DNA from: Dendrobates tinctorius
Taxonomy: Eukaryota
Reading direction: 5' to 3'
Assembly: GCF_039654945.1 (NCBI RefSeq)
Contig: NW_027362008.1
Span: 4,216,001 to 4,280,000 of the forward strand
Length of the DNA stretch: 64,000 bases
Position numbers and translations under genes: made by a program. The notes beneath the pieces are model-generated. The model did not search any database and was not told the DNA's origin. It saw only the letters and a list, made by a program, of their open reading frames with translations. Positions within the stretch are counted from its first letter, which is position 1, and each line of letters starts with the position of its first letter. Below, piece by piece: positions 1-55,359 of this stretch.

Positions 1-999
1 TTTATAGAACAAGATCAAAAAGAAATGAAGAATACATAAGAATTGGCAAAATAGAAAGGGAGGTTACACAATCGTTGACATAAAAAGATAGGTTATACAA
101 TGAGTTGTCAACCACATCCTCGGACACAAGATAAAATTAAATGAAAAATGACAGGAATACAGGGGTGCTTTCCAAAAGTCAATGTGCTCTAAGTTAATAG
201 TCATGAGTTCATATTCAAAAGATATTTTTCTAAAAAGATGTTAGAACATTTCACCTCAAAAGGGAAGAGAATGCATGTCCTTCAGATTTTCTGGGAATTG
301 TAGGAACTGACCATTAGCCATAGGACTGTGACCACATAGACAGATGATAACTGGATGTCACGACTAGTGACGAGTTCGCTGCCGAGCCAACACCTCCACG
401 TCGACGACCACGACGATGTGGGGTGAGCGTCCCAAGTGGGGATGGAATGTGGACCCACTGGACCACAGGGGGGACCCAGGCCTACCCAGACTAGGGAAGA
501 GTAGCGACCGGGGTCTGTGGCAGCTGAGCATGTGGACGAGGAGGCAGAATGACATGACACCGCACACTTCAGGTATAGACATAAAGTTTACTTGAACAAG
601 ACATGGTACATAAACGAAACAGTTATGCAAGGCTCCCGGTTCCGCACATCAGGGAAGGGTACATGTCTCAGGATAACAGAAGAAAGGCAGGAAGTCATTA
701 CGGGTTGAGCAGTCCAGGGTTGTCTGGCATGGGTATACTAGGGCGGCCTCTTCCTCAGTCCTCAGGGGTAGCAAAGGGTCACCAGGAGAATATCAGACAC
801 CGACCACAAACAGACTTCAGAAAATGGCAGGCATTGTCTGACATTTCAATCACATCCATACACGCAGTACTTCTGTATTCTCCCGCTACCCGTATTTTAT
901 CAAAAAAGCTCTAATGCCAATGGACAAAAACATAAATCTTATCTATTTATAGAAACTCTTGGTTGGTTCACTATATCCTCTAATTAGTGTCCTATCTGA

Positions 1000-1215
1000 G
1001 TACCCGGTTGCATGCAAAAAAATTGAGCAATTATATTCACATATTGTCTTCACGTGATTTTCCCACTTCATTACAAACTCCCACCCGGTTCCTTCCATTA
1101 GGTTTTTCCAAGGAGCAACTAACCAGAGAGTTTTATCTTAATCGCTGCTTTGAGCAACAAAAAGGCTGTTTATACACTGAGCACACATCATTTAGTCTCC
1201 ATACATCAACAGAGC
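1000..1215 (-). mobile_element. Possible highly decayed L1-type ORF2 fragment, present in each unit
   Basis: The minus strand reads VWRLND, followed by a WE.H.K-like motif resembling the post-endonuclease region of L1 ORF2. Weak. Confidence 0.3.
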
Positions 1216-1449
1216 TGCTTTACAGTAGTACGAAATGAATATGTTGAAGTGTATTTTCCTGGGCCCAACCAGTATGTGGGTACCAAGGTGTAATGGGGTG
1301 CATAGGACTATGCAGCAGGGCAGACATTGCTGTCACTCTGTAAACAAAAGAGTAGGGGAGAACCGTATGAATATGGTGAAGTGTATTTTTTTCCTGGGCC
1401 CATCCAGTATGTGGGTTCCAAGTGTTTAATGGGGTGCATATGACTATGG

Positions 1450-1727
1450 TATGAATCTCGGAAAAAAATATTTAAAGCTGTGAACTAGGAGTCAGGAATG
1501 CTTCCAGGGGCGATCCCCATGAATTCCCCATTTCATTTGAGCAGTGTTTAAATCATTTTCAGATGTTTCTAGACCTTAAAATGACCCCCTTGGGGGATCA
1601 CAGCAAAAATGCTCGGGTTTCCCATAGACTTATATTGGGCTCGTTGTTCTGTCTGAGTACCCAAGTATTACAATTTGCTCGACCCGAACAACGAGTGCCC
1701 AAGCATTTTAGTGCTCGCTCATCACTA
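1450..1727. mobile_element. Right-end remnant of an older hAT-type MITE (equivalent ends at 24363, 40321 and 54114)
   Basis: Ends in GCTCGCTCATCACTA, the same terminal class as the U2 foldback element. The left terminus was not found, so the start is approximate. Confidence 0.55.
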
Positions 1728-2157
1728 ATCCCAGTACTTAAAAAGCGATACTCAATTCATGGAGAATAACTTCTCTGAAATTCAAATTAATTGGGAAAAT
1801 CCAAACGGTTAAGCGATTTTGAATTTTGCTGATCTGACCCATGTTATAAAACAATCTTATCATATATTGTGCACGATGAATGCCGCATGAAGGGAAAAGT
1901 GAAAAACTGCTAAACTTGCTATTCTTGTTCATCTTACCTCACTAAAAAATTGAATTAAAAAAATCATGTATCCCAACGCTGTACCAAAACAACTAGTTTT
2001 GTACCCAAAAACATGTCCTCATGCAGATCTGCATTCAGAAAAATAAAAAGCAATGACTCTCAATATGACAGCTATAAAAAACATATTGTGATTTTCTTGG
2101 GTATGAACATAATCATGTCAGCACACAGAATAAAGTGAACAAGTCAATTATACTGCT
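1728..2157. repeat. Left arm of a ~430-bp inverted duplication (right arm 8986-9412), present in every unit
   Basis: Reverse-complement match, e.g. gcgatactcaattcatggagaataacttctctg versus cagagaagttattctccatgaattgagtatcgc. U3 arms 40322-40751 and 47081-47509; U4 arms 54115-54544 and 61044-61472. Confidence 0.9.
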
Positions 2158-3310
2158 TAAGTTTGAAAATCCACCAGGCTTCCCTATTTTGTAATGTAAC
2201 CTCCGTATCACCCCCTCTGATGGGTGTGTGTATTTTTTCAATTGCATACACCAGAAGTGTTTTCAGGTCATCTTTATGACATTCAATAAAATGTTTTGAC
2301 ACCTGAGATGTGTTCCTTTCCATGTTAATATTCTCTGTGTCATAGATGTGTTCCCCAATTCTTTTCTTCAGCTTGCGTTTTGTGCTTCCAACATGTTTTA
2401 GATGGCAGAAGGTGCACTCCATAATATATACCAAGGTTTTAGTGCTACAATTGATAAAGGTTTTAGTAGCAAAATTCTTGCTTTCACTAGAATCTCCAAA
2501 GCTAGAGCTCTCTTTAGTGTATTTACAGGACTTAGCGCCACACTTATAAAAACCCTTGGTTTTCTGCCAATTTGTGGATTGAATTTGAGACATATTCAAA
2601 AAACTTGGCAAAAGGCTCTGACCTAAAGATGGTGCTCTCCTAGAGACTATTCTAAATCCTTTCCCTATAATACTATCTATATCTGGATCCTCTTTTAATA
2701 CAGATAAATTATTTTGAATAATTCGTTCAATAGAGGCAAACTGGTTACTACACTGCGAGACCAATGTTACAGGAGTGACTGAATGTTCATGTGTGTTACA
2801 CTGAGGTTTGAATCGCGGTTTTTGAGCCACAATGTTTTCAGCTTTGCTTAAACTCCATTGGGTATAACCCCTTTGGGTCAATCACTGCTTAATGTTAGAA
2901 ACTTCCTGTTGATAATCTGTATTTGTGCTACAATTGCATTTCGCTCTCGTCATCTCCCCAACAGGTATACTTTTAATTGTATGTTTAGGATGATGGCTTT
3001 TTCCATGGAGTATAGCATTGCCTGCTGTGTTCTTTCTAAATTTTTGTGTTACTACAGGTTTACCTGAAATTCCTTGTAAAATCAAATAAAAAAAATCAAT
3101 GCATGAAATTTTATGGCGGACCACAAATTTTAAATTCAAGGGATTGCAATTAATATAAAAATTAAAATCCTGTATGGCAGATACATCAGAATTCCAGATG
3201 ATAATGATATCATCTATGTATCTGCCGTCCCAATAGACACAATCTTTAAATGGATTATTTACAGTATAAATATACAGCTCTTCCCACCAGCTCATTACCA
3301 AGTGAAGTTG
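2158..3310 (-). mobile_element. Penelope-like retroelement ORF remnant (RT C-terminus plus GIY-YIG endonuclease), U1; partial duplicate at 6479 to ~6830
   Basis: RYIDDIIIIW, FRKNTAGNAILHGKSHHP, LVYIMEC..HVGSTKRKLKKRIGEH and REAWWIFKL. In-frame TGA at 2882-2884. Truncated after IFKLK. Confidence 0.9.
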
Positions 3311-3769
3311 TCAAGCGATCCACTATATGACCAAGATGAAAATCTTTCTTTGCAATTGCGGCTTGTTCCCAGTCAACTTACGTGCATCGTTATATTTTAC
3401 TTTTGGTTATGTGTGTTTTTCCATGCGTTATTCATCCTGTTTTGAATGTGAATGTTTTTTCTTTGTCATCTAGGAATATTTAACACCATCCACTATATGA
3501 TTAAGATATAAAGTATTTTTCGCAATTGCGGCTTGTTCCTCGCTAGTTTATGTGGATTGTTATGCAGGAGCATATTGCTATCTGTGTTTTTTTATGCGAT
3601 GTAGATCTGGTTTTGAATCAAATTGTTTTCATTTTTGCTTTCACCTAGGTACTTTTACCCTCCTCCGCTGAAATTGTGTTTTTAGATCTGTGTCTCTTAC
3701 TATTACTCTATGACACTCAGTGTATGATAGAGAGAAATGTATTTTTCTTCTTTCTATGATTGTTATTGA

Positions 3770-6478
3770 ATCATAGAATCATAGAATCATAGAATCATAG
3801 AATCGTAGAGTTGGAAGGGACCTCCTGGGCCATCTGGTCCAACCCCCTGCTCAAAGCAGGATTCGCTAAATCATCCCAGTCAGATGTCTGTCCAGCCTCT
3901 GTTTGAAGACTTCCATTGAAGGAGAACTCACCACTTCTCGTGGCAGCCTGTTCCACTCATTGATCACTCTAACTGTCAAAAAGTTTTTTCTAATATCTAA
4001 TCTGTGTCTCTTCCCATTCAGTTTCATCCCATTGCTTCTAGTCTTTCCTTGTGCAAATGAGAATAAAGTTGATCCTTCTACAATGTGACAGCCCTTTAGA
4101 TATTTGTAGACAGCTATTAAGTCTCCTCTCAGTCTTCTCTTTTGCAAACTAAACATTCCCAAATCCTGCAACCTTTCCTCATAAGACAGGGATTGCAGAC
4201 CGGTCACCATTCTGGTCGCTCTTTTCTGAACTTGCTCCAGTTTGTTGATGTCTTTTTTAAAATGTGGTGCCCAAAACTGGACACAATATTCCAGATGAGG
4301 TCTGACCAAAGAGGAGTAGAGGGAAATAATGACTTCACGTGATCTAGACTGTATGCTTCTGTTAATACATCCTAGAATTGCATTTGCCTTTTTTGCTGCT
4401 GCATCACACTGTTGACTCATTTTCAGTCTGTGATCTATTAGTATACCCAAGTCTTTTTCACATGTGCTGTCACTTAGCCCTATTCCTCCCATTCTATATA
4501 TGCTTTTTTCATTTTTATTGCCCAGATGTAGTACTTTGCATTTCTCCCTGTTAAAAACCATTCTGTTAGTTGCTGCCCACTTCTCCAGTTTATTTAAATC
4601 TTTTTGAATCCTCTCTCTCTCTTCTCTAGTATTAGCTATCCCTCCTAGCTTTGTGTCATCAGCAAATTTAATCAGTTTACCCTCAATTCCTTCATCTAAA
4701 TCGTTGATAAAGATGTTGAACAATACAGGGCCCAGGACAGAGCCCTGTGGTACCCCACATGAGACATTCTTCCAACTGGATGTGCAGCCATTTACGACCA
4801 CTCTTTGGGTCCGATCACTAAGCCAGTTATGAATCCACCTAACAGTTGCCTTGTCCATTCCATACTTAGTCATTTTTTCAATAAGGATTGTATGAGAGAC
4901 TTTGTCAAATGCTTTGCTGAAGTCAAGATATACTATATCTACAGCATTTCCTTGATCCACCCAATCAGTGATACCGTCATAGAAGGAAATTAAGTTAGTC
5001 TGACATGACTTATTAGTTAGAAACCCATGCTGACTCTGTTTAATCACTTCATTCTTATCCAGGTATTGACATACAAGTTGTTTAATAATTTGTTCAAAGA
5101 TCTTTCCTGGTATAGAAGTCAGACTCACCGGCCTATAGTTGCCTGGGTCCACCTTCTTCCCCTTTTTGAAGATAGGAACAACATTTGCTCTTCTCCAGTC
5201 TTCTGGCACTTCTCCTGTTCTCCAAGAATTTTCAAAGATTATGGAGAGGGGTTCAAAAATTTCTTCTGCTATCTCCTTCAGTACTCTGGGGTGTAATTCA
5301 TCTGGACCTGGAGACTTGAATTCATTTAGGTTAGCTAACTGTTTCCTCACTATCTTTCTGTTTATAGATATCCTGGATTCTTCTATTCCCTTAATAGGAC
5401 AGTGAATAACAGTTGATGTTGCATTTCCTTTCTGAGAGAAAGCAGATGCAAAATAGGAATTTAAAAGTTCAGCCTTCTCAACATCCTGTCTTACCATTTC
5501 ATCATTTTCATCCTGTAAAAATCCTATAGCATCTTTGACTTTTCTTTTACTTTTGACATATCCCCAAAATCCTTTATTATTGCTTTTGACATCTCTTGCA
5601 AGCCTCAATTCATTTTCAGCTTTAGCTAATCTGATTTGTGCCCTGCAGGTTCTGCAGACAGCATTATATTCTTCTTTAGATATGCCTCCCTCTTTCCATT
5701 TTATCAACATTTTTTTCTTCCTTTTAGCATGTGCTTAAGTTCTGTGTTCATCCATCCTGGTTTCCTTAAATGCTTCCTATTCTTCCCTCTTTTCGGAATT
5801 GTTAACAACTGTGCTTTGAGAATTTCATTTTTCAAGATTTCCCATCCCTCCTGGACATTTTTGTCTTTTAGGATATCCAGCCATTGGACCCCTCCAATTC
5901 TCTTTCTGAATCCCAGTCTCTGAAGCTTCAATCTCTGTGCAGATATATGTGTTTCTAACATACAATGCGACACCCCCTCCTCGTTTATCAAGTCTGTTTC
6001 TTGCAAATAAGTTGTATCCTTCTAGTCTTGTATTCCAATCATGTGTATTGTCCCACCAAGTTTCAGTGATTCCAATGACATCATATTTCTTTTCCTGTGT
6101 TAGTAGTTCCAATTCTCCTTGTTTGTTGCCCATGCTTTGTGCATTAGTATAGAAGCATTTTAGTTTGTGATTGGTTTCTCTTTCTCCAATATTTTTATTA
6201 ATTAGATTCTTTCGTCTTTGTTCTTCCTTTCCACTTCTAATAGCAGAGTTCTCAATAGCATTTGTCAGGTGTATGGCTTTTTCTGGTCTTTTGCTTCCCT
6301 TCCCATGTTGTTCTAGTTTAAAGCTCTCCTTACAAGTGTAGCAAGGCGACTTCCAAATACATGCTTTCCAGTCTTCGTAAGGTGCACCCCATCTCTAGCA
6401 AGTAGTCCATCGTATAAGTAGTTCACTCCGTGATCCAGAAATTCAAATCGTTGCTGACGGCACCATCGACGTAGCCAG
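3770..6478 (-). mobile_element. CR1 LINE family A: 5'-truncated, chimeric, with a 464-bp internal deletion and a frameshift
   Basis: RT motifs GVPQGSVLGP and FADD, endonuclease motif ITETW, (TAGAATCA)n tail at the left end, ORF1 C-terminus at 6313-6477. Confidence 0.97.
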
Positions 6479-7293
6479 TACTTTTAATTGTATGTTTAGG
6501 ATGATGGCTTTTTACATGGAGTATAGCATTGCCTGCTGTGTTCTTTCTAAATTTTTGTGTTACTACAGGTTTACCTGAAATTCCTTGTAAAATCAAATAA
6601 AAAAAATCAATGCATGAAATTTTATGGCGGACCACAAATTTTAAATTCAAGGGATTGCAATTAATATAAAAATTAAAATCCCGTATGGCAGATACATCAG
6701 AATTCCAGATGATAATGATATCATCTATGTATCTGCCGTCCCAATAGACACAATCTTTAAATGGATTATTTACAGTATAAATATACAGCTCTTCCCACCA
6801 GCTCATTACCAAGTGAAATTAGCAAGTGAAGTTGTCAAGCGATCCACTATATGACCAAGATGAAAATCTTTCTTTGCAATTGCGGCTTGTTCCCAGTCAA
6901 CTTACGTGCATCGTTATATTTTACTTTTGGTTATGTGTGTTTTTCCATGCGTTATTCATCCTGTTTTGAATGTGAATGTTTTTTCTTTGTCATCTAGGAA
7001 TATTTAACACCATCCACTATATGATTAAGATATAAAGTATTTTTCGCAATTGCGGCTTATTCCTCGCTAGTTTATGTGGATTGTTATGCAGGAGCATATT
7101 GCTATCTGTGTTTTTTTATGCGATGTAGATCCGGTTTTGAATCAAATTGTTTTCATTTTTGCTTTCACCTAGGTACTTTTACCCTCCTCCGCTGAAATTG
7201 TGTTTTTAGATCTGTGTCTCTTACTATTACTCTATGACACTCAGTGTATGATAGAGAGAAATGTATTTTTCTTCTTTCTATGATTGTTATTGA
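6479..7293 (+). repeat. Direct duplicate of 2968-3769 on the other side of the U1 CR1
   Basis: The same ~0.8-kb segment flanks both ends of the CR1. The left copy lacks 13 bp. Confidence 0.93.
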
Positions 7294-7324
7294 GAATAAT
7301 ATAATAGAAAAAATGTCTTTGTAA

Positions 7325-7704
7325 GGCTGTGTGCCCACATTGCGCTTTTTCAGAGTTTCCGTGGTGATTTTAAACAAGTGATTCTGCCGCTGAAATGCTT
7401 AAGAAAATCATTCCATGTTATCATAATTGATTCCGCACATGTTGTGCTAATGGTGCGTATTTTACCGCTGCGGAATTGCTTAGCGGTAAAAAACACAGCA
7501 TGTTCATTAATTTTGTGGAATCGCATGCGATTATGCATACATACACTTGTATTGCAAAAGCGCATAGGAAATCGCATGTTAAAACATATGACAAATGCAT
7601 CAAAATTGCTAAAATCTTCAAAACTGCATGCGTTTTTCCAGCTAAGGGTGTGCGTTTCTCCTCAGGAATATTCTACTTCAAAACTGCAATGTGGGCACAT
7701 AGCC
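7325..7704. mobile_element. PIF/Harbinger-like MITE of ~380 bp; also at 28129-28511, 45420-45799 and 59383-59762
   Basis: TIRs GGCTGTGTGCCCACATTGC and GCAATGTGGGCACATAGCC, flanked by TAA/TGA (TTA/TAA in U2), consistent with a degenerate TWA TSD. Confidence 0.75.
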
Positions 7705-8109
7705 TGAAAGCGGCTTTTCTATCCTCTAGTCTGAGTGGATGGCTGTAATTTTTCATTCTGACGTTTGATCCATCATATGATATTCACTCTGTTCCAGAGT
7801 GAAATTGTATTTTCCTCTTTGGTTGTTTTGTAAAAACTCAACATCAATTTTTACAATTATGGTTCTTTCATTTGCTCCCTTATATAAATGTATATTTCTC
7901 TACTTCTGTACTGTGGCTGCTAAGAAGAATTTACAATATACTGCGTTTGTTCTGCGCAATTGAAATATATTCTCGCCTTTATGCCATGTGGAATTCACAT
8001 TCTTGATTTTAGCCATGTATGTCTTCACTTGTAATTCATTTACGTTAATTAGATATGTTCATTGTCTTTCACTAGTGTTCAGCATATTAGTGCTTTCTTG
8101 AACAATGCC

Positions 8110-8157
8110 TGTTATCATGACTAAGGGTGCTGGGACACCTGAAACGCGTTGATAACA
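8110..8157 (+). ncRNA. Minimal type I hammerhead ribozyme motif (A3-U8 core variant), U1
   Basis: Stem I UGUUAUC/GAUAACA, core AUGACUA, stem II AG(G)GUG-cuggga-CACCU, GAAA, palindromic stem III AACGCGUU. AATAAA follows at 8208-8213. Confidence 0.75.
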
Positions 8158-11100
8158 CAATCTTTTGTACCATTCATGCTGATATTTTATCTATTCACAT
8201 CTGAGTGAATAAAGAATTTGTGTTTTCACTTCTGGATCATGGCTTTTTTGTTACATTAGCCATACCTTTCTTTTTTGGGCAATATAGATGTAAAAGTGTT
8301 TTTTAAGTATCAGTTATATTTGTCAATACACTTTTTAAGTGGAACTTATTAGCATGATTTTATAAGCACTTTTTTGCAAGAGAAATAAAGAAAACAGTAA
8401 TTTTAACATTTATTTGTAGTTTAAAGTTTGTGTTATCTGATTTGCTGAAAAAATAACGCAGTAACTGCATTCAGTAGGTCAGTACTAATATGGTGCTGGT
8501 AAATTTGTATAATCTTAATTGTTTTTTATGTTTTGTACAATATACACTTTAAAAAAAAACCATTTTTATACTGTTTTACAATTTTTTGTTAGTGGCGTGG
8601 TATGAAGATTTATTTTTGCCTGAAAATCTGTAGCTTTTGTTGTTAACAGTTTGTTGTACATGCAACTTTTTGATCACTTTTACATTATTTAGGAGGCAAA
8701 ATGAAAGAAAAACACGTAAATTCTGAATTTGTTTTAATATTTTTTTAAACCCCAGTCAATGTTGGGTATAACTGTCGTGGTATCTTTATTTGGTGGACGA
8801 TATCATCACCATATTCTCATAAACTTCACTTATTTATTTTTTGGTTTATTGTAGGTGACGCTGATTGAGGCTTTGTTTTTGGTTATATATGCCTTTCTAG
8901 TTATTATTTATCTCATTGTTTTGCTGGGAAGCAGAAACAAACAGCTATGAATTGGAAATAGTTGTTATTTTTATGGAGTTCGTCCAGCAGTATAATTGAC
9001 ATGATCACTTTATTCTGTGTGCTGATATGATTATGTTCATATCTAAGAAAATCACAATACATTTTTTATAGCTGTCACATTGTGAGTCAATGCTTTGTAT
9101 TTTTCTGACTGCAGATCTGTACGAGGACATGTTTTTGGGTAACAAACTAGTTATTTTTTTTATAGCATCTGGATACATGATTTTTTAATTCAGTTTTTTA
9201 GTGAGATAAGATGAACAAGAATAGCAAGTTTAGCAGTTTCTCACTTTTCCCCTCATACAGCATTGATCATGCACAATAAATAAGATTGTTTTATAACATG
9301 GGTCAGATCAGCAAAATTCAAAATCGCTTAACTGTTTGGATTTTCCCAATTAATTTGATTTTCAGAGAAGTTATTCTCCATGAATTGAGTATCGCTGATT
9401 ATGTACTGGAATCTCTCCATGCTGATATTTTATCATCTTTTCAAATCTGAGTGAACAAAGAATTTGTTTTTTCACTTCATCGTTAAGCTAGGTCATCTCT
9501 TTTTTGGATTTTTTTATGCCAAGACATGGCAGTTCTGTGCTCAGAGCTTCATGATCTATTAACGCTGTGAGATGGATTGTTTTATATGTCTAATGTAATG
9601 CAACAAGTATAAAAATGTTCTATAGTGAAGGTCAAAACTGGCTCCAGTATGTAACAATAAAAATGAAATAATGTAAAAACTTTTTTCACTATCTCATAAA
9701 GCTAAATTTATAAACCTTTCCAAAAATAAAATGAGATTGGCGTACAAAATCAGCTCATCAAATAAGGAAATTCTCCCATTACACTAAAAATAAATTTGCA
9801 GAAACTGGTACATGACCTGTACCCATAGCGGTGCCATTTACTTGGTGGAAGGGATGAAATTAAAAATAAAATCATTTGAGTCAACTAAACATCCAATAAT
9901 ATTTTAAAACAAACCTGTTTTGTGACTAAAAACAGATCTGCTCATCTCTCATCAGTACATGGGTGGTAGAGGTTAGCAGTGAAACAATAGAAATTTATTT
10001 AGATGCATTTACATTGTTACATGATATGAATACAGTTATCTTAGATCTCTTGTGACTACAGGTAAATGTTCTTTACCCAATTTAATAAAAAAATCTACTT
10101 ACATCCAAATCTTCATTTCACTTGACCAAATAGTGAGATGTTGATGTAATTATCCTTTACAGAAACCTCTTGATTATGTCTTCTGCTGACATACTCACAC
10201 TTTTTAAAGAAATGTTTTTATTCAATATTGGCACGTTCACCCGTCTTAATCTAAAGTCACTGGATGCTTCTATAATTAAATGTAAATAAAAAAAAAGAAG
10301 GGGTTTCCAGATATGAAGATGCTATGCTACTGTGAAGGTAACATGGCAAATGCATTTCCAGTAGATGTAAAAACAGTAAATTTCTGAAGATCATAAAAAA
10401 ATAAACATCAATCAGCTATAAAAAGCTAACACATGTATTACATTCTTCAATATGTTGTACACTTGGACGGGATGGCCATGGGGGTGGCATTCACACCAAA
10501 TAAGTATCAACACAATATCTCAGTGCAATTTTGCACATCTTTAATATTGTATAAAATATAGAAAGCCACTTCTACTAGATGTCTAATAGCATGTAAATGA
10601 AGACTGTTATAGCTCCCATTTACATGAATTACACACGTATATACAAGATGTATGAAGCATGGAACACCTTACTATATTAACCCCTTACCTACAATTGACG
10701 TAATATTCCGTCCATGTGACCATGGACCTAATTACCATGGATGGAATATTACGTCATCGCGATCAGCGGCGCCCACGTGGTGAGCGCCGCTGATCGCGGC
10801 CGAGTGTCAGCTAATTATCATAGCTGACACCTGGCACAATGTGTCAGGGGCGGTCACGGACCGCCCCCGAAACGTTAACCCCTTGCACACCGCGATCAAA
10901 CGCGATCGCGGTGTACCGGGGGTTAAAGGGAAGCATCGGCAGGGAGGGGGCTCCCTCCGTGCTTCCCTGAGCCCCCCACGGCAGCGCAATGTGCAGCGCT
11001 GCTGCGGGGGGCTCTTTCCCTACAGGCCCCCGGATCCAAGATGGCGACGGGGGCCTGCAGGGAGCTGACTTCCTCACTGCCTGCAAAGCGCAGGCATGAG

Positions 11101-11392
11101 GAAGTCTGCAGCAGTGCCTGTGACAGATCGCTGATCTGTCACAGTGATCTGTGATGTGACAGATCAGCGATCTGTCACAGGACAGTGATGTCCCACCTGG
11201 GACAAGGTAATAAAGTAAAAAAAAAAAAAAAAAAAGTGTTAAAAATAATTAAAAAAAAATCGCTAAATAAATCAGTAAAAAAAAAAAAAATATTCCCCAA
11301 TAAATCCATTTTTTCAAAATAAAAAAAACCAAAAACAATAAAAGTACACATATTTGGTATCGCCGCGTCCGTAATGACCTGCCCTATAAAAC

Positions 11393-13389: not shown

Positions 13390-13419
13390 GTGTGTTGAGG
13401 TTCGGGTTGGAGTTATAAT

Positions 13420-18638: not shown

Positions 18639-18728
18639 TATGTTGAATCCATGACAAACTGCAATATGATATTTGTTTTTTTATCAATAATGTCTACAAA
18701 GCAGACTGTGAACTATTGTAAATAGCTC

Positions 18729-20738: not shown

Positions 20739-23483
20739 TAGAATCATAGAATCGTAGAGTTGGAAGGGACCTCCTGGGCCATCTGGTCCAACCCCCTGCT
20801 CAAAGCAGGATTTGCTAAATCATCCCAGTCAGATGTCTGTCCAGCCTCTGTTTGAAGACATCCATTGAAGGAGAACTCACCACTTCTCGTGGCAGCTTGT
20901 TCCACTCATTGATCACTCTAACTGTCAAAAAGTTTTTTCTAATATCTAATCTGTGTCTCCTCCCATTCAGTTTCATCCCATTGCTTCTAGTCTTTCCTTG
21001 TGCAAATGAGAATAAAGATGATCCTTCTACAATGTGACAGCCCTTGAGATATTTGTAGACAGCTATTAAGTCTCCTCTCAGTCTTCTCTTTTGCAAACTA
21101 AACAATCCCAAATCCTGCAACCTTTCCTCATAAGACAGGGTTTGCAGACCGGTCACCATTCTGGTTGCTCTTTTCTGAACTTGCTCCAGTTTGTTGATGT
21201 CTTTTTTAAAATGTGGTGCCCAAAACTGGACACAATATTCCAGATGAGGTCTGACCAGAGAGGAGTAGAGGGAAATAATGACTTCACGTGATCTAGACTG
21301 TATGCTTCTGTTAATACATCCTAGAATTGCATTTGCTTTTTTTGCTGCTGCATCACACTGTTGACTCATATTCAGTTTGTGATCTATTAGTATACCCAAG
21401 TCTTTTTCACATGTGCTGTTGCTTAGGCCTATTCCTCCCATTCTGTATATGCTTTTTTCATTTTTATTGCCCAGATGTAGTACTTTGCATTTTTCCCTGT
21501 TAAAAACCATTCTGTTAGTTTGTGCCCACTTCTCCAGTTTATTTATATCTTTTTGAATCCTCTCTCTCTCTTCTCTAGTATTAGCTATCCCTCCTAGCTT
21601 TGTGTCATCAGCAAATTTAATCAGTTTACCCTCAATTCCTTCATCTAAATTGTTGATAAAGATGTTGAACAATAAAGGGCCCAGGACAGAGACCTGTGGT
21701 ACCCCACTTGAGACATTCTTCCAACTGGATATGCTGAAATTTACGACCACTCTTTGGGTCCGATCACTAAGCCAGTTATGAATCCACCTAACAGTTGCCT
21801 TGTCCATTCCATACTTAGTCATTTTTTCAATAAGGATTGTATGAGATACTTTGTCAAATGCTTTGCTGAAGTCAAGATATACTATATCTACAGCATTTCT
21901 TTGATCCACCCAATCAGTGATTCTGTCATAGAAGGAAATTAAGTTAGTCTGACATGACTTATTAGTTACAAACCCATGCTGACTCTGTTTAATCACTTCA
22001 TTCTTATCCAGGTACTGACATACATGTTGTTTTATAATTTGTTCAAAGATCTTTCCTGGTATAGAAGTCAGACTCACCGGCCTATAGTTGCCTGGGTCCA
22101 CCTTCTTCCCCTTTTTGAAGATAGGAACAACATTTGCTCTTCTCCAGTCTTCCGGGACTTCTCCTGTTCTCCAAGAATTTTCAAATATTATGGAGAGGGG
22201 TTCAAAAATTTCTTCTGCTATCTCCTTCAGTACTCTGGGGTGTAATTCATCTGGACCTGGAGACTTGAATTCATTTAGGTTAGCTAAGTGTTTCCTCACT
22301 ATCTTTCTGTTTATAGATATCCTGGATTCTTCTATTCCCTTAATAGGACAGTGAAGAACAGTTGATGTCACATTTCCTTTCTGAGAGAAAACAGATGCAA
22401 AATAGGAATTTAAAAGTTCGGCCTTCTCAACATCCTGTCTTACCATTTCATCATTTTCATCCTGTAAAAATCCTATAGCATCTTTGACTTTTCTTTTACT
22501 TTTGACATATCCCCAAAATCCTTTATTATTGCTTTTGACATCTCTTGCAAGCCTCAATTCATTGTCAGCTTTAGATAATCTGATTTGTGACCTGCAGGTT
22601 CTGCAGACAGCATTATATTCTTCTTTAGATATGCCTCCCTCTTTCCATTTTATAAACATTTTTTTCTTCCATTTTAGCATGTGCTTAAGTTTTGTGTTCA
22701 TCCATCCTGGCTTCCTTAAATGCTTCCTATTCTTCCCTCTTTTCGGAATTGTTAACAATTGTGCTTTGAGAATTTCATTTTTCAAGATTTCCCATCCTTC
22801 CTGGACATTTTTGTCTTTAAGGATATCCAGCCATTGGATCCCTCCAATTCTCGTTCTGAATCCCTTAAAATCTGCCTTTCTGAAATCTAACCTTGACGTC
22901 TGAGTCTTCACAGGTCTTCCTCCTCTAGTTATCCAAAATTCTAAAATAGCATGGTCGCTACCTCCTAGGGTCCCAGCCACTTTTACCTCCTCAACCATTT
23001 CCTCCCTGTTTATAAGGATTAGATCCAAGGTAGCAGTTCCCCTTGTTTTCTCCCCTACCTTTTGGAAGATAAAGTTGTCAGCAAGAGAGGATAAGAATTT
23101 CCTTGACCTGTTAGTTTTGCCTGAGAGAGATTCCCAACAAATGTCTGGATAGTTGAAATCTCCCATGACAACTATGTCATATTTTTGGGAGAACTTGGCC
23201 ATTTGATGCATAAAGAGTTCATCCATATCTTCAGCTTGCACAGGTGGCCTGTAGTAAATGCCTACAATGGTGTCCTTTCCATTGTTCTGTCCTTGTATTC
23301 TTACCCAAACAGTTTCCACAGAACTCCCAGTCTCTGAAGCTTCAATCTCTGTGCAGATATACGCGTTTCTAACATACAATGCGACACCTCCTCCTCGTTT
23401 ATCAAGTCTGTTTCTTGCAAATAAGTTGTATCCTTCTAGTCTTGTATTCCAATCATGTGTATTGTCCCACCAAGTTTCAGTGA
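20739..23483 (-). mobile_element. CR1 family A, 5'-truncated within the endonuclease; remaining ORF2 is open (854 aa in the track)
   Basis: EN motifs (GDFN, SDH), RT domain and octamer tail. Short TSD/microhomology TTCA at 20735-20738 and 23484-23487. The site is empty in U1, U3 and U4. Confidence 0.97.
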
Positions 23484-24792
23484 TTCAATCACATCCATAC
23501 GCGCAGTACTTCTGTATTCTCCCGCTACCTGTATTTTATCAAAAAAGCTATAATGCCAATGGACAAAAACATAAATCTTATCTATTTGTAGAAAGTCTTG
23601 GTTGGTTCACTATATCCTCTAATTAGTGTCCTATCTGAGTACCCGGTTGCATACAAAAAAATTGAGCATTTATATTCACATATTGTCTTCACGTGATTTT
23701 CCCACTTCATTACAAACTTCCACCCGGTTCCTTCCATTAGGTTTTTCCAAGGAGCAACTAACCAGAGAGTTTTATCTTACTCACTGCTTTGAACAGCAAA
23801 AGGGCTGTTTAGAAACTGAGCACACATCATTTAGTCTCCATACATCAACAGGGCTGCTGTACAGGAGTACGAAATGAATATGGTGAAGTGTATTTTCCTG
23901 GGCCCAACCAGTATGTGGGTACCAAGGTGTAATGGGGTGCATAGGACTATGCAGCAGGGCAGACATTGCTGTCACTGTGTAAACAAAAGAGTAGGGGAGT
24001 ACCGTATGAATATGGTGAAGTGTATTTTCCTGGGCCCATCCAGTATGTGGGTTCCAAGTGTGTAATGGGGTGCATATGACTATGGTATGAATGTCAGAAA
24101 AAAATATTTAAAGCTATGAACTAGGAGTCAGGAATGCTTCCAGGGGCGATCCCCATGAATTCCCTGTGTCATTTGAGCAGTGTTTCCATAATTTTCAGAT
24201 GTTTCTAGACCTTAAAATGACCCCCTTGGGGGATCGGGGCAAAAATGCTCGGGTCTCCCATAGACTTATATTGGGCTCATTGTTCTGTCCGAGTACCCAA
24301 GTATTACAATTTGCTCGACCCGAACAACGAGTGCCCAAGCATTTTAGTGCTCGCTCATCACTAATCCCAGTACATAAAAAGCGATACCCAATTCATGGAG
24401 AATAACTTCTCTGAAATTCAAATTAATTGGGAAAATCCAAACACTTAAGCGATTTTGAATTTTGCTGCTCTGACCCATGTTATAAAACAATCTTATCATT
24501 TATTGTGCACGATGAATGCCGTATGAAGGAAAAAGTGAAAAACTGCAAAACTTGCTATTCTTGTTCATCTTAACTCACTAAAAAATTGAATTAAAAAAAT
24601 CATGTATCCCGATGCTATACCAAAACAACTAGTTTGTTACCCAAAACCATGTCCTCATGCAGATCTGCATTCAGAAAAATAAAAAGCAATGACTCTCAAT
24701 ATGACAGCTATAAAAACATATTGTGATTTTATTTGGTATGAACATAATCATGTCAGCACACAGAATAAAGTGAACATGTCAATTATACTGCT

Positions 24793-27630
24793 TAAGTTTG
24801 AAAATCCACCAGGCTTCCCTATTTTTTAATGTAACCTCCGTATCACCCCCTCTGATGGGTGTGTGTATTTTTTCAATTGCATACACCACAAGTGATTTCA
24901 GGTCAGTACTGCAGGAATTAAGCTCTGTCATAGATAGACCATTATTTTTAATCTTTAAAGATTCCATAATAACAGGGTCTGTACCACAGGACTGGCGTAT
25001 AGCAAATGTGGGGCCAATATTCAAAAAGGGGACAAAAACTGAACTTGGAAATTATAGGCCAGTAAGTTTAACCTCAACTGTGGGTAAAATCCTGGAGGGT
25101 TTTCTAAAAGATACTATACTGGAGTATCTGGAGAAGAATAACCTCATGACCCAATATCAACATGGGTTTACAAGGGACCGTTCCTGTCAGACTAATCTGA
25201 TAAGCTTTTATGAAGAGGTAAGTTCCGGACTGGACCAAGGGAATGCAGTGGATGTGGTGTACATGGACTTTTCAAAAGCTTTTGATACGGTGCCACACAA
25301 AAGGTTGATACATAAAATGAGAACAATGGGGATAGGGGAAAATATGTGTAGGTGGGTTAAGAGCTGGCTCAGGGATAGGAAACAAAGGGTGGTTATTAAT
25401 GGAGCACACTCAGACTGGGTCACGGTTAGCAGTGGGGTACCACAGGGGTCAGTTTTGGGCCCGCATCTTTTTAACATATTTATTAATGACCTTGTAGGGG
25501 GCATAGAGAGTAGAATTTCAATATTTGCAGATGACACTAAACTCTGCAGGGTAATCAATACAGAGGAGGACAATTTTATATTACAGACGGATTTATGTAA
25601 ACTAGAAGCTTGGGCTGATAAATGGCAAATGAGCTTTAATGGGGATAAATGTAAGGTCATGCACTTGGGTAGAACGAACAAGATGTATAATTATGTGCTT
25701 AATTGTAAAACACTGGGCAAAACAGTCACTGAAAAAGACCTGGGTGTATGGGTGGACGACAAACTCACATTTAGCGGCCAGTGTCAGGCAGCTGCTGCAA
25801 AGGCAAATAAAATAGTGGGATGCATTAAAAGAGGCATAGATGCTCATGAGGAGAACATAATTTTACCTCTATATAAGTCACTAGTGCGACCACACTTAGA
25901 ATACTGTGTACAGTTCTGGTCTCCGGTGTATAAGAAAGACATAGCTGAACTGGAGCGGGTGCAGAGAAGAGCGACCAAGGTTATTAGGGAACTAGGGGGT
26001 CTGCAATACCAAGACAGGTTATTACATTTGGGGTTATTTAGTTTGGAGAATCGAAGGCTTAGGGGTGATCTTATTACAATGTATAAATATATGCGGGGAC
26101 AATACCAAGAGCTTTCTAATGATCTTTTTACTCTTAGACCTGTGATGGGGACAAGGGGGCATCCTCTACGTCTGGAGGAAAGAAGGTTTAAGCATACTCA
26201 CAGACGCGGATTCTTTACTGTAAGAGCAGTGAGACTATGGAACTCTCTGCCATATGATGTTGTAATGAGTGATTCCCTACTAAAATGTAAGAATGGACTG
26301 GATGCCTTTCTTGAAAAGTATAATATTACAGGGTATATACACTAGTTTCCTTAATATTGCGTTGATCCAGGGAGCAAGTCTGATTGCCGTATGTGGAGTC
26401 AGGAAGGAATTTTTTTCCCCAATGTGAAGCTTACTTGTTGCCACATGGGTTTTTTTTGCCTTCCTCTGGATCAACATGTTAGGGCAAGTTAGGATAGGAT
26501 ATGGGTTGAACTAGATGGACTTAAAGTCTCCCTTCAACCTTAATAACTATGTTACTATGTTACTATGTTACAAGTGATTTCAGGTCAACTTTATGACATT
26601 CAATAAAATGTTTTGACACCTGAGATGTGTTCCTCTCCATGTTAATATTCTCTTTGTCATAGATGTGTTCCCTAATTTTATTCTTCAGCTTGCGTTTTGT
26701 GCTTCCAACATGTTTTAGATGGCAGAAGGTGCACTCCATAATATATACCAAGGTTTTAGTGCTGCAATTGATAAAGGCTTTAATAGCAAAATTCTTGATT
26801 TCTCTAGAATCTCTAAAGCTAGAGCTCTCTTTAGTGTATTTACAGGACTTAGCGCCACACTTATAAAAACCCTTGGTTTTCAGCCAATCTGTGAATTGAA
26901 TTTGAGACATATTCAAAAAACTTGGTGAAAGGCTCTGACCTAAGATGGTGCTCTTCTAGAGACGATTCTAAATCCTTTCCCTATAATACTATCTATATCT
27001 AGATCCTCTTTTAATATAGATAAATTATTTTGAATAATTCTTTTAACAGAGGCAAATTGGTTACTATTCTGCAAGACCAATGTTACAGGAGTGACTGAAT
27101 ATTCATGTGTGTTACACTTAGCTTTGATTCGCGGTTTTTCAGCCACAATGTTTTCAGCTTTGCTTAAACTCCATTGGGTATAACCCCTTTGGGTCAATCG
27201 CTGCTTAATGTTAGAAACCTCTTGTTTATAATCTGTATTTGTGCTACAATTGCATTTAGCTGTCGTCATCTCCCCAACAGGTATACTTTTAATTGTATGT
27301 TTAGAATGATGGCTTTTTCCATGGAGTATAGCATTGCCTGCTGTGTTCTTTCTAAATTTTTGTGTTACTACAGGTTTACCTGAAATTCCTTGTAAAATCA
27401 AATAAAAAAAATCAATGCATGAAATTTTATGCCGAACCACAAATTTTAAATTCAAGGGATTGCAATTAATATAAAAATTAAAATCCCGTACGGCAGATAC
27501 ATCAGAATTCCAGATGATAATGATATCATCTACGTATCTGCCATACCAATAGACACAATCTTTAAATGGATTATTTACAGTATAAATATACAGCTCTTCC
27601 CACCAGCTCATTACCAAGTGAAATTAGCAA
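24793..27630 (-). mobile_element. Penelope-like remnant, U2 (interrupted by CR1-B)
   Basis: Same motifs (YVDD). It has Arg where the other copies have the stop, but is frameshifted near 26940. Confidence 0.88.
24906..26569 (+). mobile_element. CR1 LINE family B (a distinct family), 5'-truncated, inserted into the Penelope GIY-YIG region
   Basis: RT ORF open to 26345 and clearly divergent from family A. (ACTATGTT)n tail. 18-bp TSD ACAAGTGATTTCAGGTCA at 24888-24905 and 26570-26587. Confidence 0.97.
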
Positions 27631-29343
27631 GTGAAGTTGTCAAGCGATCCACTATATGACCAAGATGAAAATCTTTCTTTGCAATTGCGGCTTGTTCCCT
27701 GCCAACTTACGTGTATCGTTATATTTTACTTTTGGTTATGTGTGGTTTCCATGCGTTATTCATCCTGTTTTGAATGTAAATGTTTTTTCTTTGTCATCTA
27801 GGAAAATTTAACACCATCCACTATATGATTAAGATATAAAGTATTTTTCACAATTGCGGCTTGTTCCTCGCAAGTTTATGTGGATTGTTATGCTGGAGAA
27901 TATTGCTATGTGTGTTTTTTTTATGCGATATCGATCCAGTTCTGAATGAAATTGTTTTCATTTTTGCTTTCACCTAGGTACTTTTACCCTCCTCCGCTAA
28001 AATTGTGCTTTTAGATCTGTGTCTCTTACTATTACTCTATGACACTCAGTGCATGATAGAGAGAAATGTTTTTTTCTTCTTTCTATGATTGTTATCGAGA
28101 ATAATATAATAGAAAAATGTTTTTGTTAGGCTGTGTGCCCACGTTGCGCTTTTTGGAGTTTCCGTGGCAATTTTAAACACGTGATTCAGCCGCGGAAACG
28201 ATTAAGAAAAGCATTCCATATTATCATAATTGATTCCGCACATGTTGTGCTAATGGTGCATATTTTACCGCTGTGGAACTGCTTAGCAGTAAAAAAACAC
28301 AGCATGTTCATTAATTTTGTGGAATCGCGTGCGATTATGCATACATACACTTGTATTGCAAAAATGCATAGGAAATCGCATGTTAAAATGTATGACAAAT
28401 GCATCAAAATCGCTAAAAACCTCAAAACCGCATGCGTTTTTCCAGCAAAAAAGGATGTGCATTTCTGCTTAGGAATATTCTACTTCAAAACTGCAATGTG
28501 GGCACACAGCCTAAAAGCGGCTTTTCTTTCCTCTAGTCTGAGTGGATGGCTGTAATTTTTCATTCTATGGTTATGTGTGTTTTTCCATGCGTTATTCATC
28601 CTGTTTTAAATGTAAATGTTTTTTCTTTGTCATCTAGGAAAACTTAACACCATCCACTATATGATTAAGATATAAAGTATGTTTCGCAATTGCGGTTTGT
28701 TCCTCGCTAGTTTATGTTGATTGTTATGCTGGACCATATTGCTATGTGCGTTTTTTTATGCGATATCGATCCGGTTTTGAATGAAATTGTTTTCATTTTT
28801 GCTTTCATCTAGGTACTTTTACCCTCCATCGCGTCAAAATCGCTAAAATTGCCAAAACCGCATGCGTTTTTCCAGCAAAGGGTGTGCGTTTCTGCTCAGG
28901 AATATTCTACTTCAAAACTGTAATGTGGGCACATAGCCTAAAAGCGGCTTTTCTTTCCTCTAGTCTGAGTGGATGGCTGTAATTTTTCATTCTGACTATT
29001 GATGTATCATATGATTTTCACTCTGTTCCAGAGGGAAATTGTGTTTTCCGCTTTGGTTGGTTTGTAAAAACTCAACATCAATTTTTACAATTATGGTTCT
29101 TTCATTTGCTCCCTTATATAAATGTATATTTCTGTACTTCTGTACTGTGGCTGCTAAGAAGAATTTACAATATACTGCGTTTGTTCTGCGCAATTGAAAT
29201 ATATTCTCGCCTTTATGCCATGTGGAATCCACATTCTTGATTTTAACCATGTATGTCTTCACGTGTAATTCATTTGCGTTAATTAGATATGTTAATTGTC
29301 TTTCACTAGTGTTCAGCATATTAGTGCTTTCTTGAACAATGCC

Positions 29344-41900: not shown

Positions 41901-42376
41901 ATTAGCAAGTGAAGTTGTCAAGCGATCCACTATATGACCAAGATGAAAATCTTTCTTTGCAATTGCGGCTTGTTCCCAGTCAACTTACGTGCATCGTTAT
42001 ATTTTCCTTTTGGTTATGTGTGTTTTTCCATGCGTTATTCATCCTGTTTTGAATGTGAATGTTTTTTCTTTGTCATCTAGGAATATTTAACACCATCCAC
42101 TATATGATTAAGATATAAAGTATTTTTCGCAATTGCGGCTTGTTCCTCGCTAGTTTATGTGGATTGTTATGCAGGAGCATATTGCTATCTGTGTTTTTTT
42201 ATGCGATGTAGATCTGGTTTTGAATCAAATTGTTTTCATTTTTGCTTTCACCTAGGTACTTTTACCCTCCTCTGCTGAAATTGTGTTTTTAGATCTGTGT
42301 CTCTTACTATTACTCTATGACACTCAGTGTATGATAGAGAGAAATGTATTTTTCTTCTTTCTATGATTGTTATTGA

Positions 42377-45300: not shown

Positions 45301-45377
45301 TAATAGAAGAGTTCTCAATAGCATTTGTCAGGTGTATGGCTTTTTCTGGTCTTTTGCTTCCCTTCCCATGTTGTTCT
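42377..45377 (-). mobile_element. CR1 family A, complete ORF2 region with a 1-bp frameshift near 44556
   Basis: EN and RT are split over two ORFs. Tail at the left end. TSD ATTGA at 42372-42376 and 45384-45388, plus 6 extra nt at the 5' junction. Confidence 0.97.
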
Positions 45378-46204
45378 TGAGAAATTGAGAATAATATAAT
45401 AGAAAAAATGTCTTTGTAAGGCTGTATGCCCACATTGCGCTTTTTCAGAGTTTCCGTGGTGATTTTAAACAAGTGATTCTGCCGCTGAAATGCTTAAGAA
45501 AATCATTCCATGTTATCATAATTGATTCCGCACATGTTGTGCTAATGGTGCGTATTTTACTGCTGCGGAATTGCTTAGCGGTAAAAAACACAGCATGTTC
45601 ATTAATTTTGTGGAATCGCATGCGATTATGCATACATACACTTGTATTGCAAAAGCGCATAGGAAATCGCATGTTAAAACATATGACAAATGCATCAAAA
45701 TTGCTAAAATCTTCAAAACTGCATGCGTTTTTCCAGCTAAGGGTGTGCGTTTCTCCTCAGGAATATTCTACTTCAAAACTGCAATGTGGGCACATAGCCT
45801 GAAAGTGGCTTTTCTATCCTCTAGTCTGAGTAGATGGCTGTAATTTTTCATTCTGACGTTTGATCCATCATATGATTTTCACTCTGTTCCAGAGTGAAAT
45901 TGTATTTTCCTCTTTGGTTGTTTTGTAAAAACTCAACATCAATTTTTACAATTATGGTTCTTTCATTTGCTCCCTTATATAAATGTATATTTCTCTACTT
46001 CTGTACTGTGGCTGCTAAGAAGAATTTACAATATACTGCGTTTGTTCTGCGCAATTGAAATACATTCTCGCCTTTATGCCATGTGGAAATCACATTCCTG
46101 ATTTTAGCCATGTATGTCTTCACTTGTAATTCATTTACGTTAATTAGATATGTTAATTGTCTTTCACTAGTGTTCAGCATATTAGTGCTTTCTCGAACAA
46201 TGCC

Positions 46205-54100: not shown

Positions 54101-55359
54101 CTCGCTCATCACTAATCCCAGTACTTAAAAAGCGATACCCAATTCATGGAGAATAACTTCTCTGAAATTCAAATTAATTGGGAAAATCCAAACGGTTAAG
54201 CGATTTTGAATTTTGCTGATCTGACCCATGTTATAAAACAATCTTATCATATATTGTGCACGATGAATGCTGCATGAAGGGAAAAGTGAAAAACTGCTAA
54301 ACTTGCTATTCTTGTTCATCTTACCTCACTAAAAAATTGAATTAAAAAAATCATGTATCCCAACGCTGTACCAAAACAACTAGTTTTGTACCCAAAAACA
54401 TGTCCTCATACAGATCTGCATTCAGAAAAATAAAAAGCAATGACTCTGAATATGACAGCTATAAAAAACATATTGTGATTTTCTTGGGTATGAACATAAT
54501 CATGTCAGCACACAGAATAAAGTGAACAAGTCAATTATACTGCTTAAGTTTGAAAATCCACCAGGCTTCCCTATTTTGTAATGTAACCTCCGTATCACCC
54601 CCTCTGATGGGTGTGTGTATTTTTTCAATTGCATACACCAGAAGTGTTTTCAGGTCATCTTTATGACATTCAATAAAATGTTTTGACACCTGAGATGTGT
54701 TCCTTTCCATGTTAATATTCTCTGTGTCATAGATGTGTTCCCCAATTCTTTTCTTCAGCTTGCGTTTTGTGCTTCCAACATGTTTTAGATGGCAGAAGGT
54801 GCACTCCATAATATATACCAAGGTTTTAGTGCTACAATTGATAAAGGTTTTAGTAGCAAAATTCTTGCTTTCACTAGAATCTCCAAAGCTAGAGCTCTCT
54901 TTAGTGTATTTACAGGACTTAGCGCCACACTTATAAAAACCCTTGGTTTTCTGCCAATTTGTGGATTGAATTTGAGACATATTCAAAAAACTTGGCAAAA
55001 GGCTCTGACCTAAAGATGGTGCTCTCCTAGAGACTATTCTAAATCCTTTCCCTATAATACTATCTATATCTGGATCCTCTTTTAATACAGATAAATTATT
55101 TTGAATAATTCGTTCAATAGAGGCAAACTGGTTACTATACTGCGAGACCAATGTTACAGGAGTGACTGAATGTTCATGTGTGTTACACTTAGCTTTGAAT
55201 CGCGGTTTTTGAGCCACAATGTTTTCAGCTTTGCTTAAACTCCATTGGGTATAACCCCTTTGGGTCAATCACTGCTTAATGTTAGAAACTTCCTGTTGAT
55301 AATCTGTATTTGTGCTACAATTGCATTTAGCTCTTGTCATCTCCCCAACAGGTATACTT

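What the first reader, a model, noticed from the sequence alone, without database searches (positions are those of the whole stretch)
2968..7293. U1 CR1 is a chimera of two independent insertions: a fossil unequal crossover that duplicated 0.8 kb
Seen: its 3' junction (gttattga|atcatagaa, 3769) equals that of the U3 CR1 (42376), while its 5' junction (gacgtagccag|tacttttaattg, 6478) equals that of the U4 CR1 (58536). In U3 and U4 these are separate insertions ~0.8 kb apart, each with its own 5-bp TSD. The interval between the two sites is present twice in U1 (2968-3769 and 6479-7293). Diagnostic residues switch too. The RT half is U3-type (RLAK, QLVC, GFLT, VSCG, RLKM) and the EN half is U4-type (GGVQW, NTYIC, QEKKY). 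The left flank is U3-type (FKPQC, SQCS) and the right flank U4-type (VGTQP, RSGK). The crossover falls at about 5627-5847. Inference: misaligned units recombined through their LINEs, so CR1s act as recombination substrates that change kinase copy number.
Basis: partly seen in the sequence, partly recalled or inferred. Interest (0 to 1): 0.75.

Follow-up and report, generated by a model that had tools for sequence, protein, structure and literature searches.

The report
Recombinant CR1 flanked by duplicated 0.8 kb
In a poison-frog tandem array of kinase genes, one repeat unit carries a jumping gene (CR1 LINE) stitched together from two separate insertions, which duplicated the 0.8 kb between them. 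This is a clear but ordinary case of recombination through repeats, and it looks more like a short copied patch than a copy-number-changing crossover.

Summary
U1 reads L-X(2968-3769)-CR1(3770-6478, minus strand)-X(6479-7293)-R. Its 3' junction matches the U3 CR1 junction, and its 5' junction matches the U4 CR1 junction. U3 and U4 each carry a complete insertion with its own 5-bp TSD (attga, tactt). U2 is empty at both sites.

Variants inside the CR1 switch cleanly between 5843 and 5848. Seven sites shared by U1 and U3 all lie at or before 5626. Five sites shared by U1 and U4 all lie at or after 5848. So the element is a homologous-recombination chimera, and the X duplication is its by-product.

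The single-crossover reading is only partly supported. U1 turns U3-like again between 8155 and 8373. A two-breakpoint model fits far better than one (BIC 140.6 vs 161.8). The U4-like tract 5848-~8260 differs from U4 by 0.13%, against a U3-like background of 0.35-0.8%. A second U4-like patch lies at about 2041-2700.

The simplest reading is gene conversion or a double exchange between paralogues. That need not change kinase copy number.

A U1-private 460-bp deletion with tccc microhomology lies 65 bp from the switch.

No long-read check was possible, because only short-read contigs were available. LINE-mediated ectopic recombination is well known, so this is a new example of a known kind. The scan has a similar unchecked note about 196 kb upstream.

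The parts
1..2967 (.). Left flank L of U1. Mostly U3-like (U1-U3 0.35% over 1-2040), with a U4-like patch at about 2041-2700 (U1-U4 1/660).
2968..3769 (.). X copy a (802 bp). It has a private 13-bp slippage deletion at 3298/3299. It shares two derived sites with U3's X, but is mixed overall.
3770..5845 (-). CR1a-derived 3' part of the chimeric CR1: the (tcatagaa)n tail and the RT-coding half. All 7 U1+U3 shared variants lie here.
5843..5848 (.). Left switch point. The last U3-type site is 5843 and the first U4-type site is 5848.
5846..6478 (-). CR1b-derived 5' part (EN-coding). It has 0/468 differences from U4, plus the 164 bp (6315-6478) that only CR1b has.
5911..5914 (.). Junction of a U1-private 460-bp internal CR1 deletion. 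The missing stretch is U3 44515-44973 and U4 57509-57968. There is 4-bp microhomology (tccc), and the junction lies 65 bp from the switch.
6479..7293 (.). X copy b (815 bp), with 1 difference from U4's X (private A at 6514).
7294..8260 (.). Proximal right flank, U4-like (U1-U4 2/967, U1-U3 11/967). The right switch lies between 8155 and 8373.
8261..10680 (.). Distal right flank, U3-like again (U1-U3 0.79%, U1-U4 1.84%). With U2 as outgroup, 12 sites group U1 with U3 and none group U1 with U4.
42372..45388 (-). Parent type a in U3: TSD attga, CR1a 42377-45377, filler tgagaa 45378-45383, TSD attga.
55355..58541 (-). Parent type b in U4: TSD tactt, CR1b 55360-58536, TSD tactt.
27284..28098 (.). 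X in U2. Both insertion sites are empty, which is the pre-insertion state.
20739..23484 (-). A third independent CR1 (CR1c) in U2, at a different site (equivalent to U1 position ~848). TSD tca/ttca, with a different 5' truncation point.

Best explanation
Two CR1 LINEs inserted independently, 0.8 kb apart and in the same orientation, into different lineages of a ~13.9-kb kinase repeat unit. CR1a sits at the right end of X, in the lineage leading to U3 and U1. CR1b sits at the left end of X, in the lineage leading to U4.

Later, a CR1a-type unit (the U1 ancestor, L-X-CR1a-R) exchanged sequence with a CR1b-type unit (L-CR1b-X-R) by homologous recombination. One end of the exchange lay inside the aligned CR1s, at 5843-5848. 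The other end lay in the right flank, at 8155-8373.

The copied tract carried the CR1b 5' end, X and about 0.9 kb of R into U1. This gave L-X-CR1a/b-X-R.

The exchanged tract is bounded on both sides and is the youngest part of U1. The event is therefore most simply an interparalogue gene conversion, either a non-crossover or two exchanges. It is less simply a single unequal crossover.

Shown here: the structure, the two parental insertion signatures, the empty sites, the two switch points and the divergence levels.

Inferred: the direction (U1 as recipient), the conversion mechanism, and a possible link between the exchange and the 460-bp microhomology deletion 65 bp away.
For: - Junction identities, TSDs and empty sites.
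- With the U2 CR1 as fourth sequence, CR1 variants split cleanly. Seven U1+U3 sites lie at or before 5626 and five U1+U4 sites lie at or after 5848. Such an unmixed order has a chance of 1 in 792.
- In the three-sequence comparison the CR1 3' part has 15 U3-type and 5 U4-type sites, and the 5' part has 0 and 10 (Fisher p = 2e-4).
- The tract 5846-8260 has 29 of 31 sites U4-type. Distal R has 5 of 35 (Fisher p = 2e-11).
- The best segmentation has two breakpoints (BIC 140.6, against 161.8 for one breakpoint).
- U1-U4 divergence in the tract is 3 in about 2,400 bp (0.13%). U1-U3 divergence elsewhere is 0.35-0.8%.
- A second U4-like patch at 2041-2700 shows that patchy exchange occurs in this array.
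- Only U3 and U4 hold complete TSD-flanked insertions, so U1 is the derived form.
- U1 has private changes in both halves: a 13-bp deletion in Xa, a 460-bp deletion in the CR1, and private substitutions in L, the CR1 3' part, Xb and R (6, 4, 1 and 18). It is therefore not a copy of U3 and U4 themselves.
Against: - Only three comparable units lie in the window, and the array extends at least about 200 kb upstream. The true donor and recipient may be unseen units.
- A CR1b-type unit with a U3-like distal R would rescue the single-crossover reading.
- No long read was available to confirm that both junctions lie on one molecule. The public runs are short-read contigs that break at the CR1.
- X copy a gives mixed signal: 3 sites match U3 and 5 match U4.
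Confidence: 0.58

Rival explanations
1. Single unequal crossover (NAHR) between CR1a of one unit and CR1b of a misaligned unit. Later gene conversion of the distal right flank, or a parental b-type unit that was already U3-like there, hides the simple pattern. This would have changed unit number unless the partners were allelic units.
For: It gives the same structure and the same left breakpoint. The array is visibly mosaic, for example the patch at 2041-2700, so later overwriting is possible. An unchecked scan note reports another hybrid CR1 about 196 kb upstream.
Against: A one-breakpoint model fits much worse (BIC 161.8 vs 140.6) and does not even place its break in the CR1. The U4-like tract is the youngest part of U1 (0.13%). 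A later overwrite of distal R should look younger still, yet U1-U3 divergence there is 0.79%.
Confidence: 0.27
2. Assembly or haplotype-switch artefact. Two real units, one a-type and one b-type, or two alleles of one unit, were joined wrongly inside the near-identical CR1.
For: A false join inside a high-copy repeat that is about 99% identical between copies would give exactly X-CR1a/b-X. No junction is unique to U1. The short-read contigs end at the CR1 edges and cannot link the parts.
Against: The window has 64 kb without N across units that are 96-99% identical, which implies long reads that would span a 2.7-kb CR1. U1 has private variants on both sides, so it is not built from U3 and U4 themselves. 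CR1a and CR1b differ about every 100 bp, which leaves little room for an undetected switch.
Confidence: 0.09
3. U1 is the ancestral state: one CR1 insertion with an 815-bp target-site duplication. U3 and U4 each lost one X copy by deletion, and U2 lost the CR1 by X-X recombination.
For: X flanks the CR1 exactly as a TSD would. Three X sites group (U1a, U3) against (U1b, U4).
Against: - It needs two independent deletions of about 0.8-1 kb, each leaving exactly 5 bp of X and thereby imitating a TSD. One of them must also end in the microsatellite tail.
- It does not predict the switch of CR1 variants at 5843/5848.
- The family's other insertion here has a 3-4-bp TSD.
- U2 differs from the other units by about 4-6%, while the CR1 copies differ from each other by about 1-2.6%.
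Confidence: 0.02
4. Non-homologous (microhomology) joining. The 5911-5914 junction (tccc) is itself the join between a CR1a-type and a CR1b-type unit, that is, a roughly 13.5-kb deletion fusing two neighbouring units.
For: A 4-bp microhomology junction lies close to the switch. Joining U3 44514 to U4 57969 would give the U1 structure.
Against: Sites 5848, 5869 and 5889 lie on the 3' (CR1a) side of that junction and are already U4-type. The switch is therefore 65 bp away, inside uninterrupted homology. Distal R is not U4-type.
Confidence: 0.03

Closest known systems
LINE-LINE (L1) and Alu-mediated non-allelic homologous recombination in human genomes (Startek et al. 2015, PMC4344489; Balachandran et al. 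2022, PMC9675761)
   Same: A chimeric retroelement whose two ends carry junctions and TSDs of two different insertions. The breakpoint lies inside uninterrupted homology. The segment between the two elements is gained or lost.
   Different: - The element here is a CR1-clade LINE in a frog.
- The partners lie in paralogous units of a tandem array and are offset by only 0.8 kb.
- The flanks do not stay parental beyond about 1 kb, so the product looks like a conversion patch and not a simple crossover duplication.
Interlocus (ectopic) gene conversion and concerted evolution in tandem gene arrays (established knowledge)
   Same: A bounded tract of a few kb that is nearly identical to one paralogue sits on a background closer to another. 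Several patches occur in one unit.
   Different: One tract end uses homology provided by two independent LINE insertions at different positions. The conversion therefore carries in a structural difference and duplicates 0.8 kb, where ordinary conversion only homogenises.
Template switching during break-induced replication or synthesis-dependent repair (established knowledge, recalled from memory, not tested)
   Same: It would explain several switches plus a microhomology deletion clustered within 65 bp as one repair event.
   Different: It is pure inference here. Nothing in the sequence shows that the deletion and the exchange happened together. The chance of such proximity is about 4%.

Membership tests
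CR1-clade LINE (non-LTR retrotransposon) | ORF2 with an apurinic-type endonuclease followed by a reverse transcriptase | tested here: met
   Pfam Exo_endo_phos (2e-17) and RVT_1 (1.3e-36) on the U3 copy's ORFs. The U1 copy is collinear apart from the 460-bp deletion.
CR1-clade LINE (non-LTR retrotransposon) | 3' end formed by an octamer microsatellite of the ATTCTATG type instead of poly(A) | tested here: met
   On the + strand, (atcataga) x3-4 abuts the target in U1, U3, U4 and U2.
CR1-clade LINE (non-LTR retrotransposon) | Variable 5' truncation and short target-site duplications | tested here: met
   There are three different 5' ends (CR1a, CR1b, CR1c), with TSDs attga, tactt and tca/ttca.
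LINE-mediated NAHR product (single unequal crossover) | Chimeric element with junctions and TSD halves from two different insertions, with both parental configurations identifiable | tested here: met
LINE-mediated NAHR product (single unequal crossover) | One switch only, with each flank keeping its parental identity outward from the element | tested here: not met
   A second switch lies at 8155-8373 and a U4-like patch at 2041-2700. The two-breakpoint model is preferred. The parents may be units outside the window, so this lowers the claim without excluding it.
LINE-mediated NAHR product (single unequal crossover) | A reciprocal product (unit lacking X) or a change in unit number | not testable with these tools
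   No X-less unit lies in the window.
Interparalogue gene-conversion tract | A tract bounded by two switch points, closer to the donor than the background is to any paralogue | tested here: met
   The tract 5848-~8260 shows U1-U4 divergence of 0.13%, against a background U1-U3 of 0.35-0.8%.
Interparalogue gene-conversion tract | No exchange of flanking markers or unit number (non-crossover) | not testable with these tools
   This needs the whole array or pedigree or population data.

The most novel reading that the evidence does not exclude
The exchange, the 460-bp microhomology deletion 65 bp from it, the return to the original template about 2.4 kb further on, and possibly the 2041-2700 patch are footprints of one template-switching repair event. 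In that event independently inserted young CR1s served as the homology that let two differently structured paralogues pair. If hybrid CR1s recur along this array of 200 kb or more (an unchecked scan note reports another one), young CR1s would be a main driver of structural turnover in the frog kinase array.
Probability: 0.2. Interest if true: 0.45.

Novelty: new member of a known kind. Interest (0 to 1): 0.3.

Why it matters
The locus preserves all the states needed to read a repeat-mediated rearrangement: the empty site, both parental insertions and the recombinant. It shows that very young CR1 copies in a giant frog genome serve as recombination substrates inside a gene array.

It is also a caution. 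A chimeric LINE with mismatched TSDs is usually read as a crossover. Here the flanking variants show a bounded patch, so such signatures do not by themselves show a copy-number change.

The mechanism itself, ectopic recombination or conversion through dispersed repeats, is well established in mammals. The gain is therefore an example, not a new principle.

Tried and rejected
1. Read support. The look-up of sequencing runs gave 24 runs, and four were laid on 2700-7600 at 99% likeness. All are short-read contigs of about 350 bp or less in this region. They break at the CR1 edges (for example 3420-3769 and 7264-7489), and CR1 word depth is 1e5-1e6. Nothing spans the structure, so the long-read test stays open. 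A contig covering 5825-5878 has depth about 2,000, so the local variant combination is common among genomic CR1 copies and is not diagnostic.

2. The 460-bp deletion junction as the join between parents. Rejected, because three U4-type sites lie on its CR1a side.

3. The 815-bp TSD (U1-ancestral) model. Rejected on parsimony and on the variant switch.

4. Rfam at gathering thresholds on 1-16300 found nothing.

5. Pfam on the two minus-strand ORFs that cover L and X found nothing significant, so what X encodes, if anything, is open.

6. The scan's own notes gave the organism and one similar unchecked note, but no sequence from outside the window.

7. The large protein searches were not used, because no claim here rests on them.
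Full report
**Layout of the window.** A self-comparison shows a tandem array of units of about 13.9 kb.
- U1 (partial) covers 1-10680.
- A 5.5-kb spacer covers 10680-16212.
- U2, which is older and about 94-96% identical to the others, covers 16212-34940.
- U3 covers 34937-48777 and U4 covers 48774-62716.
- U5 starts at 62713.

Each unit carries protein-kinase exons. In U3 these are at 35624-37362 on the plus strand (Pfam Pkinase 9e-26). The window has no N. Notes of the scan name the genome as a poison frog.

**The observation.** The stretch called X occurs twice in U1, at 2968-3769 and 6479-7293. The copies differ by 4 substitutions and one 13-bp slippage deletion that is private to copy a. 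Between them lies a minus-strand LINE, 3770-6478.

The U3 copy of this LINE encodes an Exo_endo_phos endonuclease and an RVT_1 reverse transcriptase. It ends in the octamer microsatellite typical of CR1.

The junction print-outs show three things.
- U1's X|CR1 junction is that of U3, and U1's CR1|X junction is that of U4.
- U3 reads L-X-CR1a-R. It has TSD attga and a 6-nt filler at the 5' junction. CR1a is 164 bp shorter at its 5' end than CR1b.
- U4 reads L-CR1b-X-R with TSD tactt.

U2 is empty at both sites and carries a third CR1 at yet another site, with TSD tca/ttca. CR1a and CR1b are therefore separate retrotransposition events, and U1 holds the 3' half-signature of one and the 5' half-signature of the other.

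**Is the element a chimera?** I aligned the CR1s of U1, U3 and U4, with the U2 CR1 as a fourth sequence.
- Seven sites group U1 with U3 against U4 and U2: 4309, 4421, 4759, 5020, 5076, 5421, 5626.
- Five sites group U1 with U4 against U3 and U2: 5848, 5869, 5889, 5948, 5950.
- The two classes do not interleave. The chance of such an unmixed order is 1 in 792.

Counting all sites where U3 and U4 differ, the 3' part has 15 U3-type and 5 U4-type sites, and the 5' part has 0 and 10 (Fisher p = 2e-4). The switch lies between 5843 and 5848, inside uninterrupted homology.

U1's CR1 also lacks 460 bp that both U3 and U4 have. That junction is at 5911-5914 with microhomology tccc. Three U4-type sites lie between the switch and this junction, so the deletion is not the join between the parents. 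It is 65 bp from the switch. By chance this closeness would occur about 4% of the time, so a link is possible but is only inference.

**Does everything to the right stay U4-type?** It does not.
- X copy b differs from U4's X at one site.
- Proximal R (7294-8260) differs from U4 at 2 of 967 sites.
- From 8373 onward U1 is U3-like again. U1-U3 divergence is 0.79% and U1-U4 is 1.84%. With U2 as outgroup, twelve sites group U1 with U3 and none group U1 with U4.

I ran a likelihood segmentation of the 122 informative sites.
- The preferred model has two breakpoints, at 5843/5848 and 8155/8373 (BIC 140.6).
- The one-breakpoint model scores 161.8 and does not place its break in the CR1.
- A four-breakpoint model is nearly as good (BIC 142.4). 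It adds a U4-like patch at 2053-2646, where U1-U4 differ at 1 of 660 sites.

The U4-like tract is the youngest part of U1: 3 differences in about 2,400 bp, or 0.13%. The U3-like background shows 0.35-0.8%.

**Reading.** U1 is a CR1a-type unit that received a bounded tract from a CR1b-type unit. The tract ran from inside the CR1, through the CR1b 5' end and X, into R. Its left end paired CR1a with CR1b, which sit 0.8 kb apart relative to the unit, so X was brought in a second time.

A tract bounded on both sides is the signature of gene conversion or a double exchange. A single unequal crossover remains possible. It would require either that the b-type parent, perhaps a unit outside the window, already had a U3-like distal R, or that distal R was overwritten later. 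The second route fits poorly with distal R being more diverged than the tract. Neither reading can be settled from three units, because the array extends at least about 200 kb upstream.

The claim that this event changed kinase copy number is not shown.

**Artefact check.** The decisive test is a long read holding both junctions, and it could not be run. The public runs that hold this DNA are short-read contigs that stop at the CR1 edges. CR1 word depth in them is 1e5-1e6.

Three points argue against a misjoin.
- The window is gap-free across near-identical units, which implies reads longer than the 2.7-kb CR1.
- U1 has private variants in both halves, so it is not assembled from U3 and U4 themselves.
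- CR1a and CR1b differ about every 100 bp.

I leave about 9% for an artefact.

**Other models.** An ancestral 815-bp TSD with later precise losses needs two deletions that each leave exactly 5 bp. It also does not predict the variant switch, so I reject it.

**Comparison with what is known.** Chimeric LINEs and Alus with mismatched TSDs are the accepted mark of repeat-mediated ectopic recombination in humans (PMC4344489, PMC9675761). Patchy interparalogue conversion is the rule in tandem arrays (established knowledge). This locus is a well-preserved example involving a young CR1 in a frog, not a new kind of event. The scan holds one similar, unchecked first-reader note about 196 kb upstream (s1-369689), which I could not test.

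Noticed in passing
window 13266-13389 and 13421-15574: The spacer between U1 and U2 holds an interstitial telomere-type repeat, (TAGGGT) x20.8. A 373-bp satellite of 5.6 copies follows directly. This subtelomere-like pair sits inside the kinase array.
   Followed up: no
window 20739-23484, 42377-45377, 55360-58536, 11399-12565: Three independent CR1 insertions, in the same orientation, fall within the same homologous stretch of about 3 kb in three unit lineages (sites a, b, c). An inverted 1.17-kb CR1 fragment lies in the spacer. All copies are about 97-99.4% identical. This may be an insertion hotspot, or it may simply reflect the very high CR1 load (word depth 1e5-1e6 in short-read contigs).
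   Followed up: partly
window 2041-2700: A second U4-like patch lies in U1's otherwise U3-like left flank. All 7 informative sites are U4-type, and U1-U4 differ at 1 of 660 sites. It is evidence of ongoing patchy conversion, or part of the same event.
   Followed up: partly
window 40666-41733 (minus strand; U1 equivalent ~2050-3140): Two adjacent minus-strand ORFs of 269 and 85 aa run through L into X. CR1b inserted inside the second one. Neither has a significant Pfam match. They look like a remnant of an older mobile element, but this was not identified.
   Followed up: partly
window 8110-8213: Another first-stage note proposes a minimal hammerhead ribozyme here, which lies at the right edge of the exchanged tract. 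Rfam at gathering thresholds finds no family anywhere in 1-16300. A minimal motif could still fall below threshold.
   Followed up: partly
window 24905-26572 and 30257-33490: U2 carries extra sequence absent from U1, U3 and U4. It includes a block of direct and inverted repeats at 30498-33316 with copies 81-87% alike.
   Followed up: no
window 3619: Short-read contigs of the best-matching sample read T where the window has C, at depth 55-95. The most likely cause is other units of the array sharing the surrounding words.
   Followed up: no
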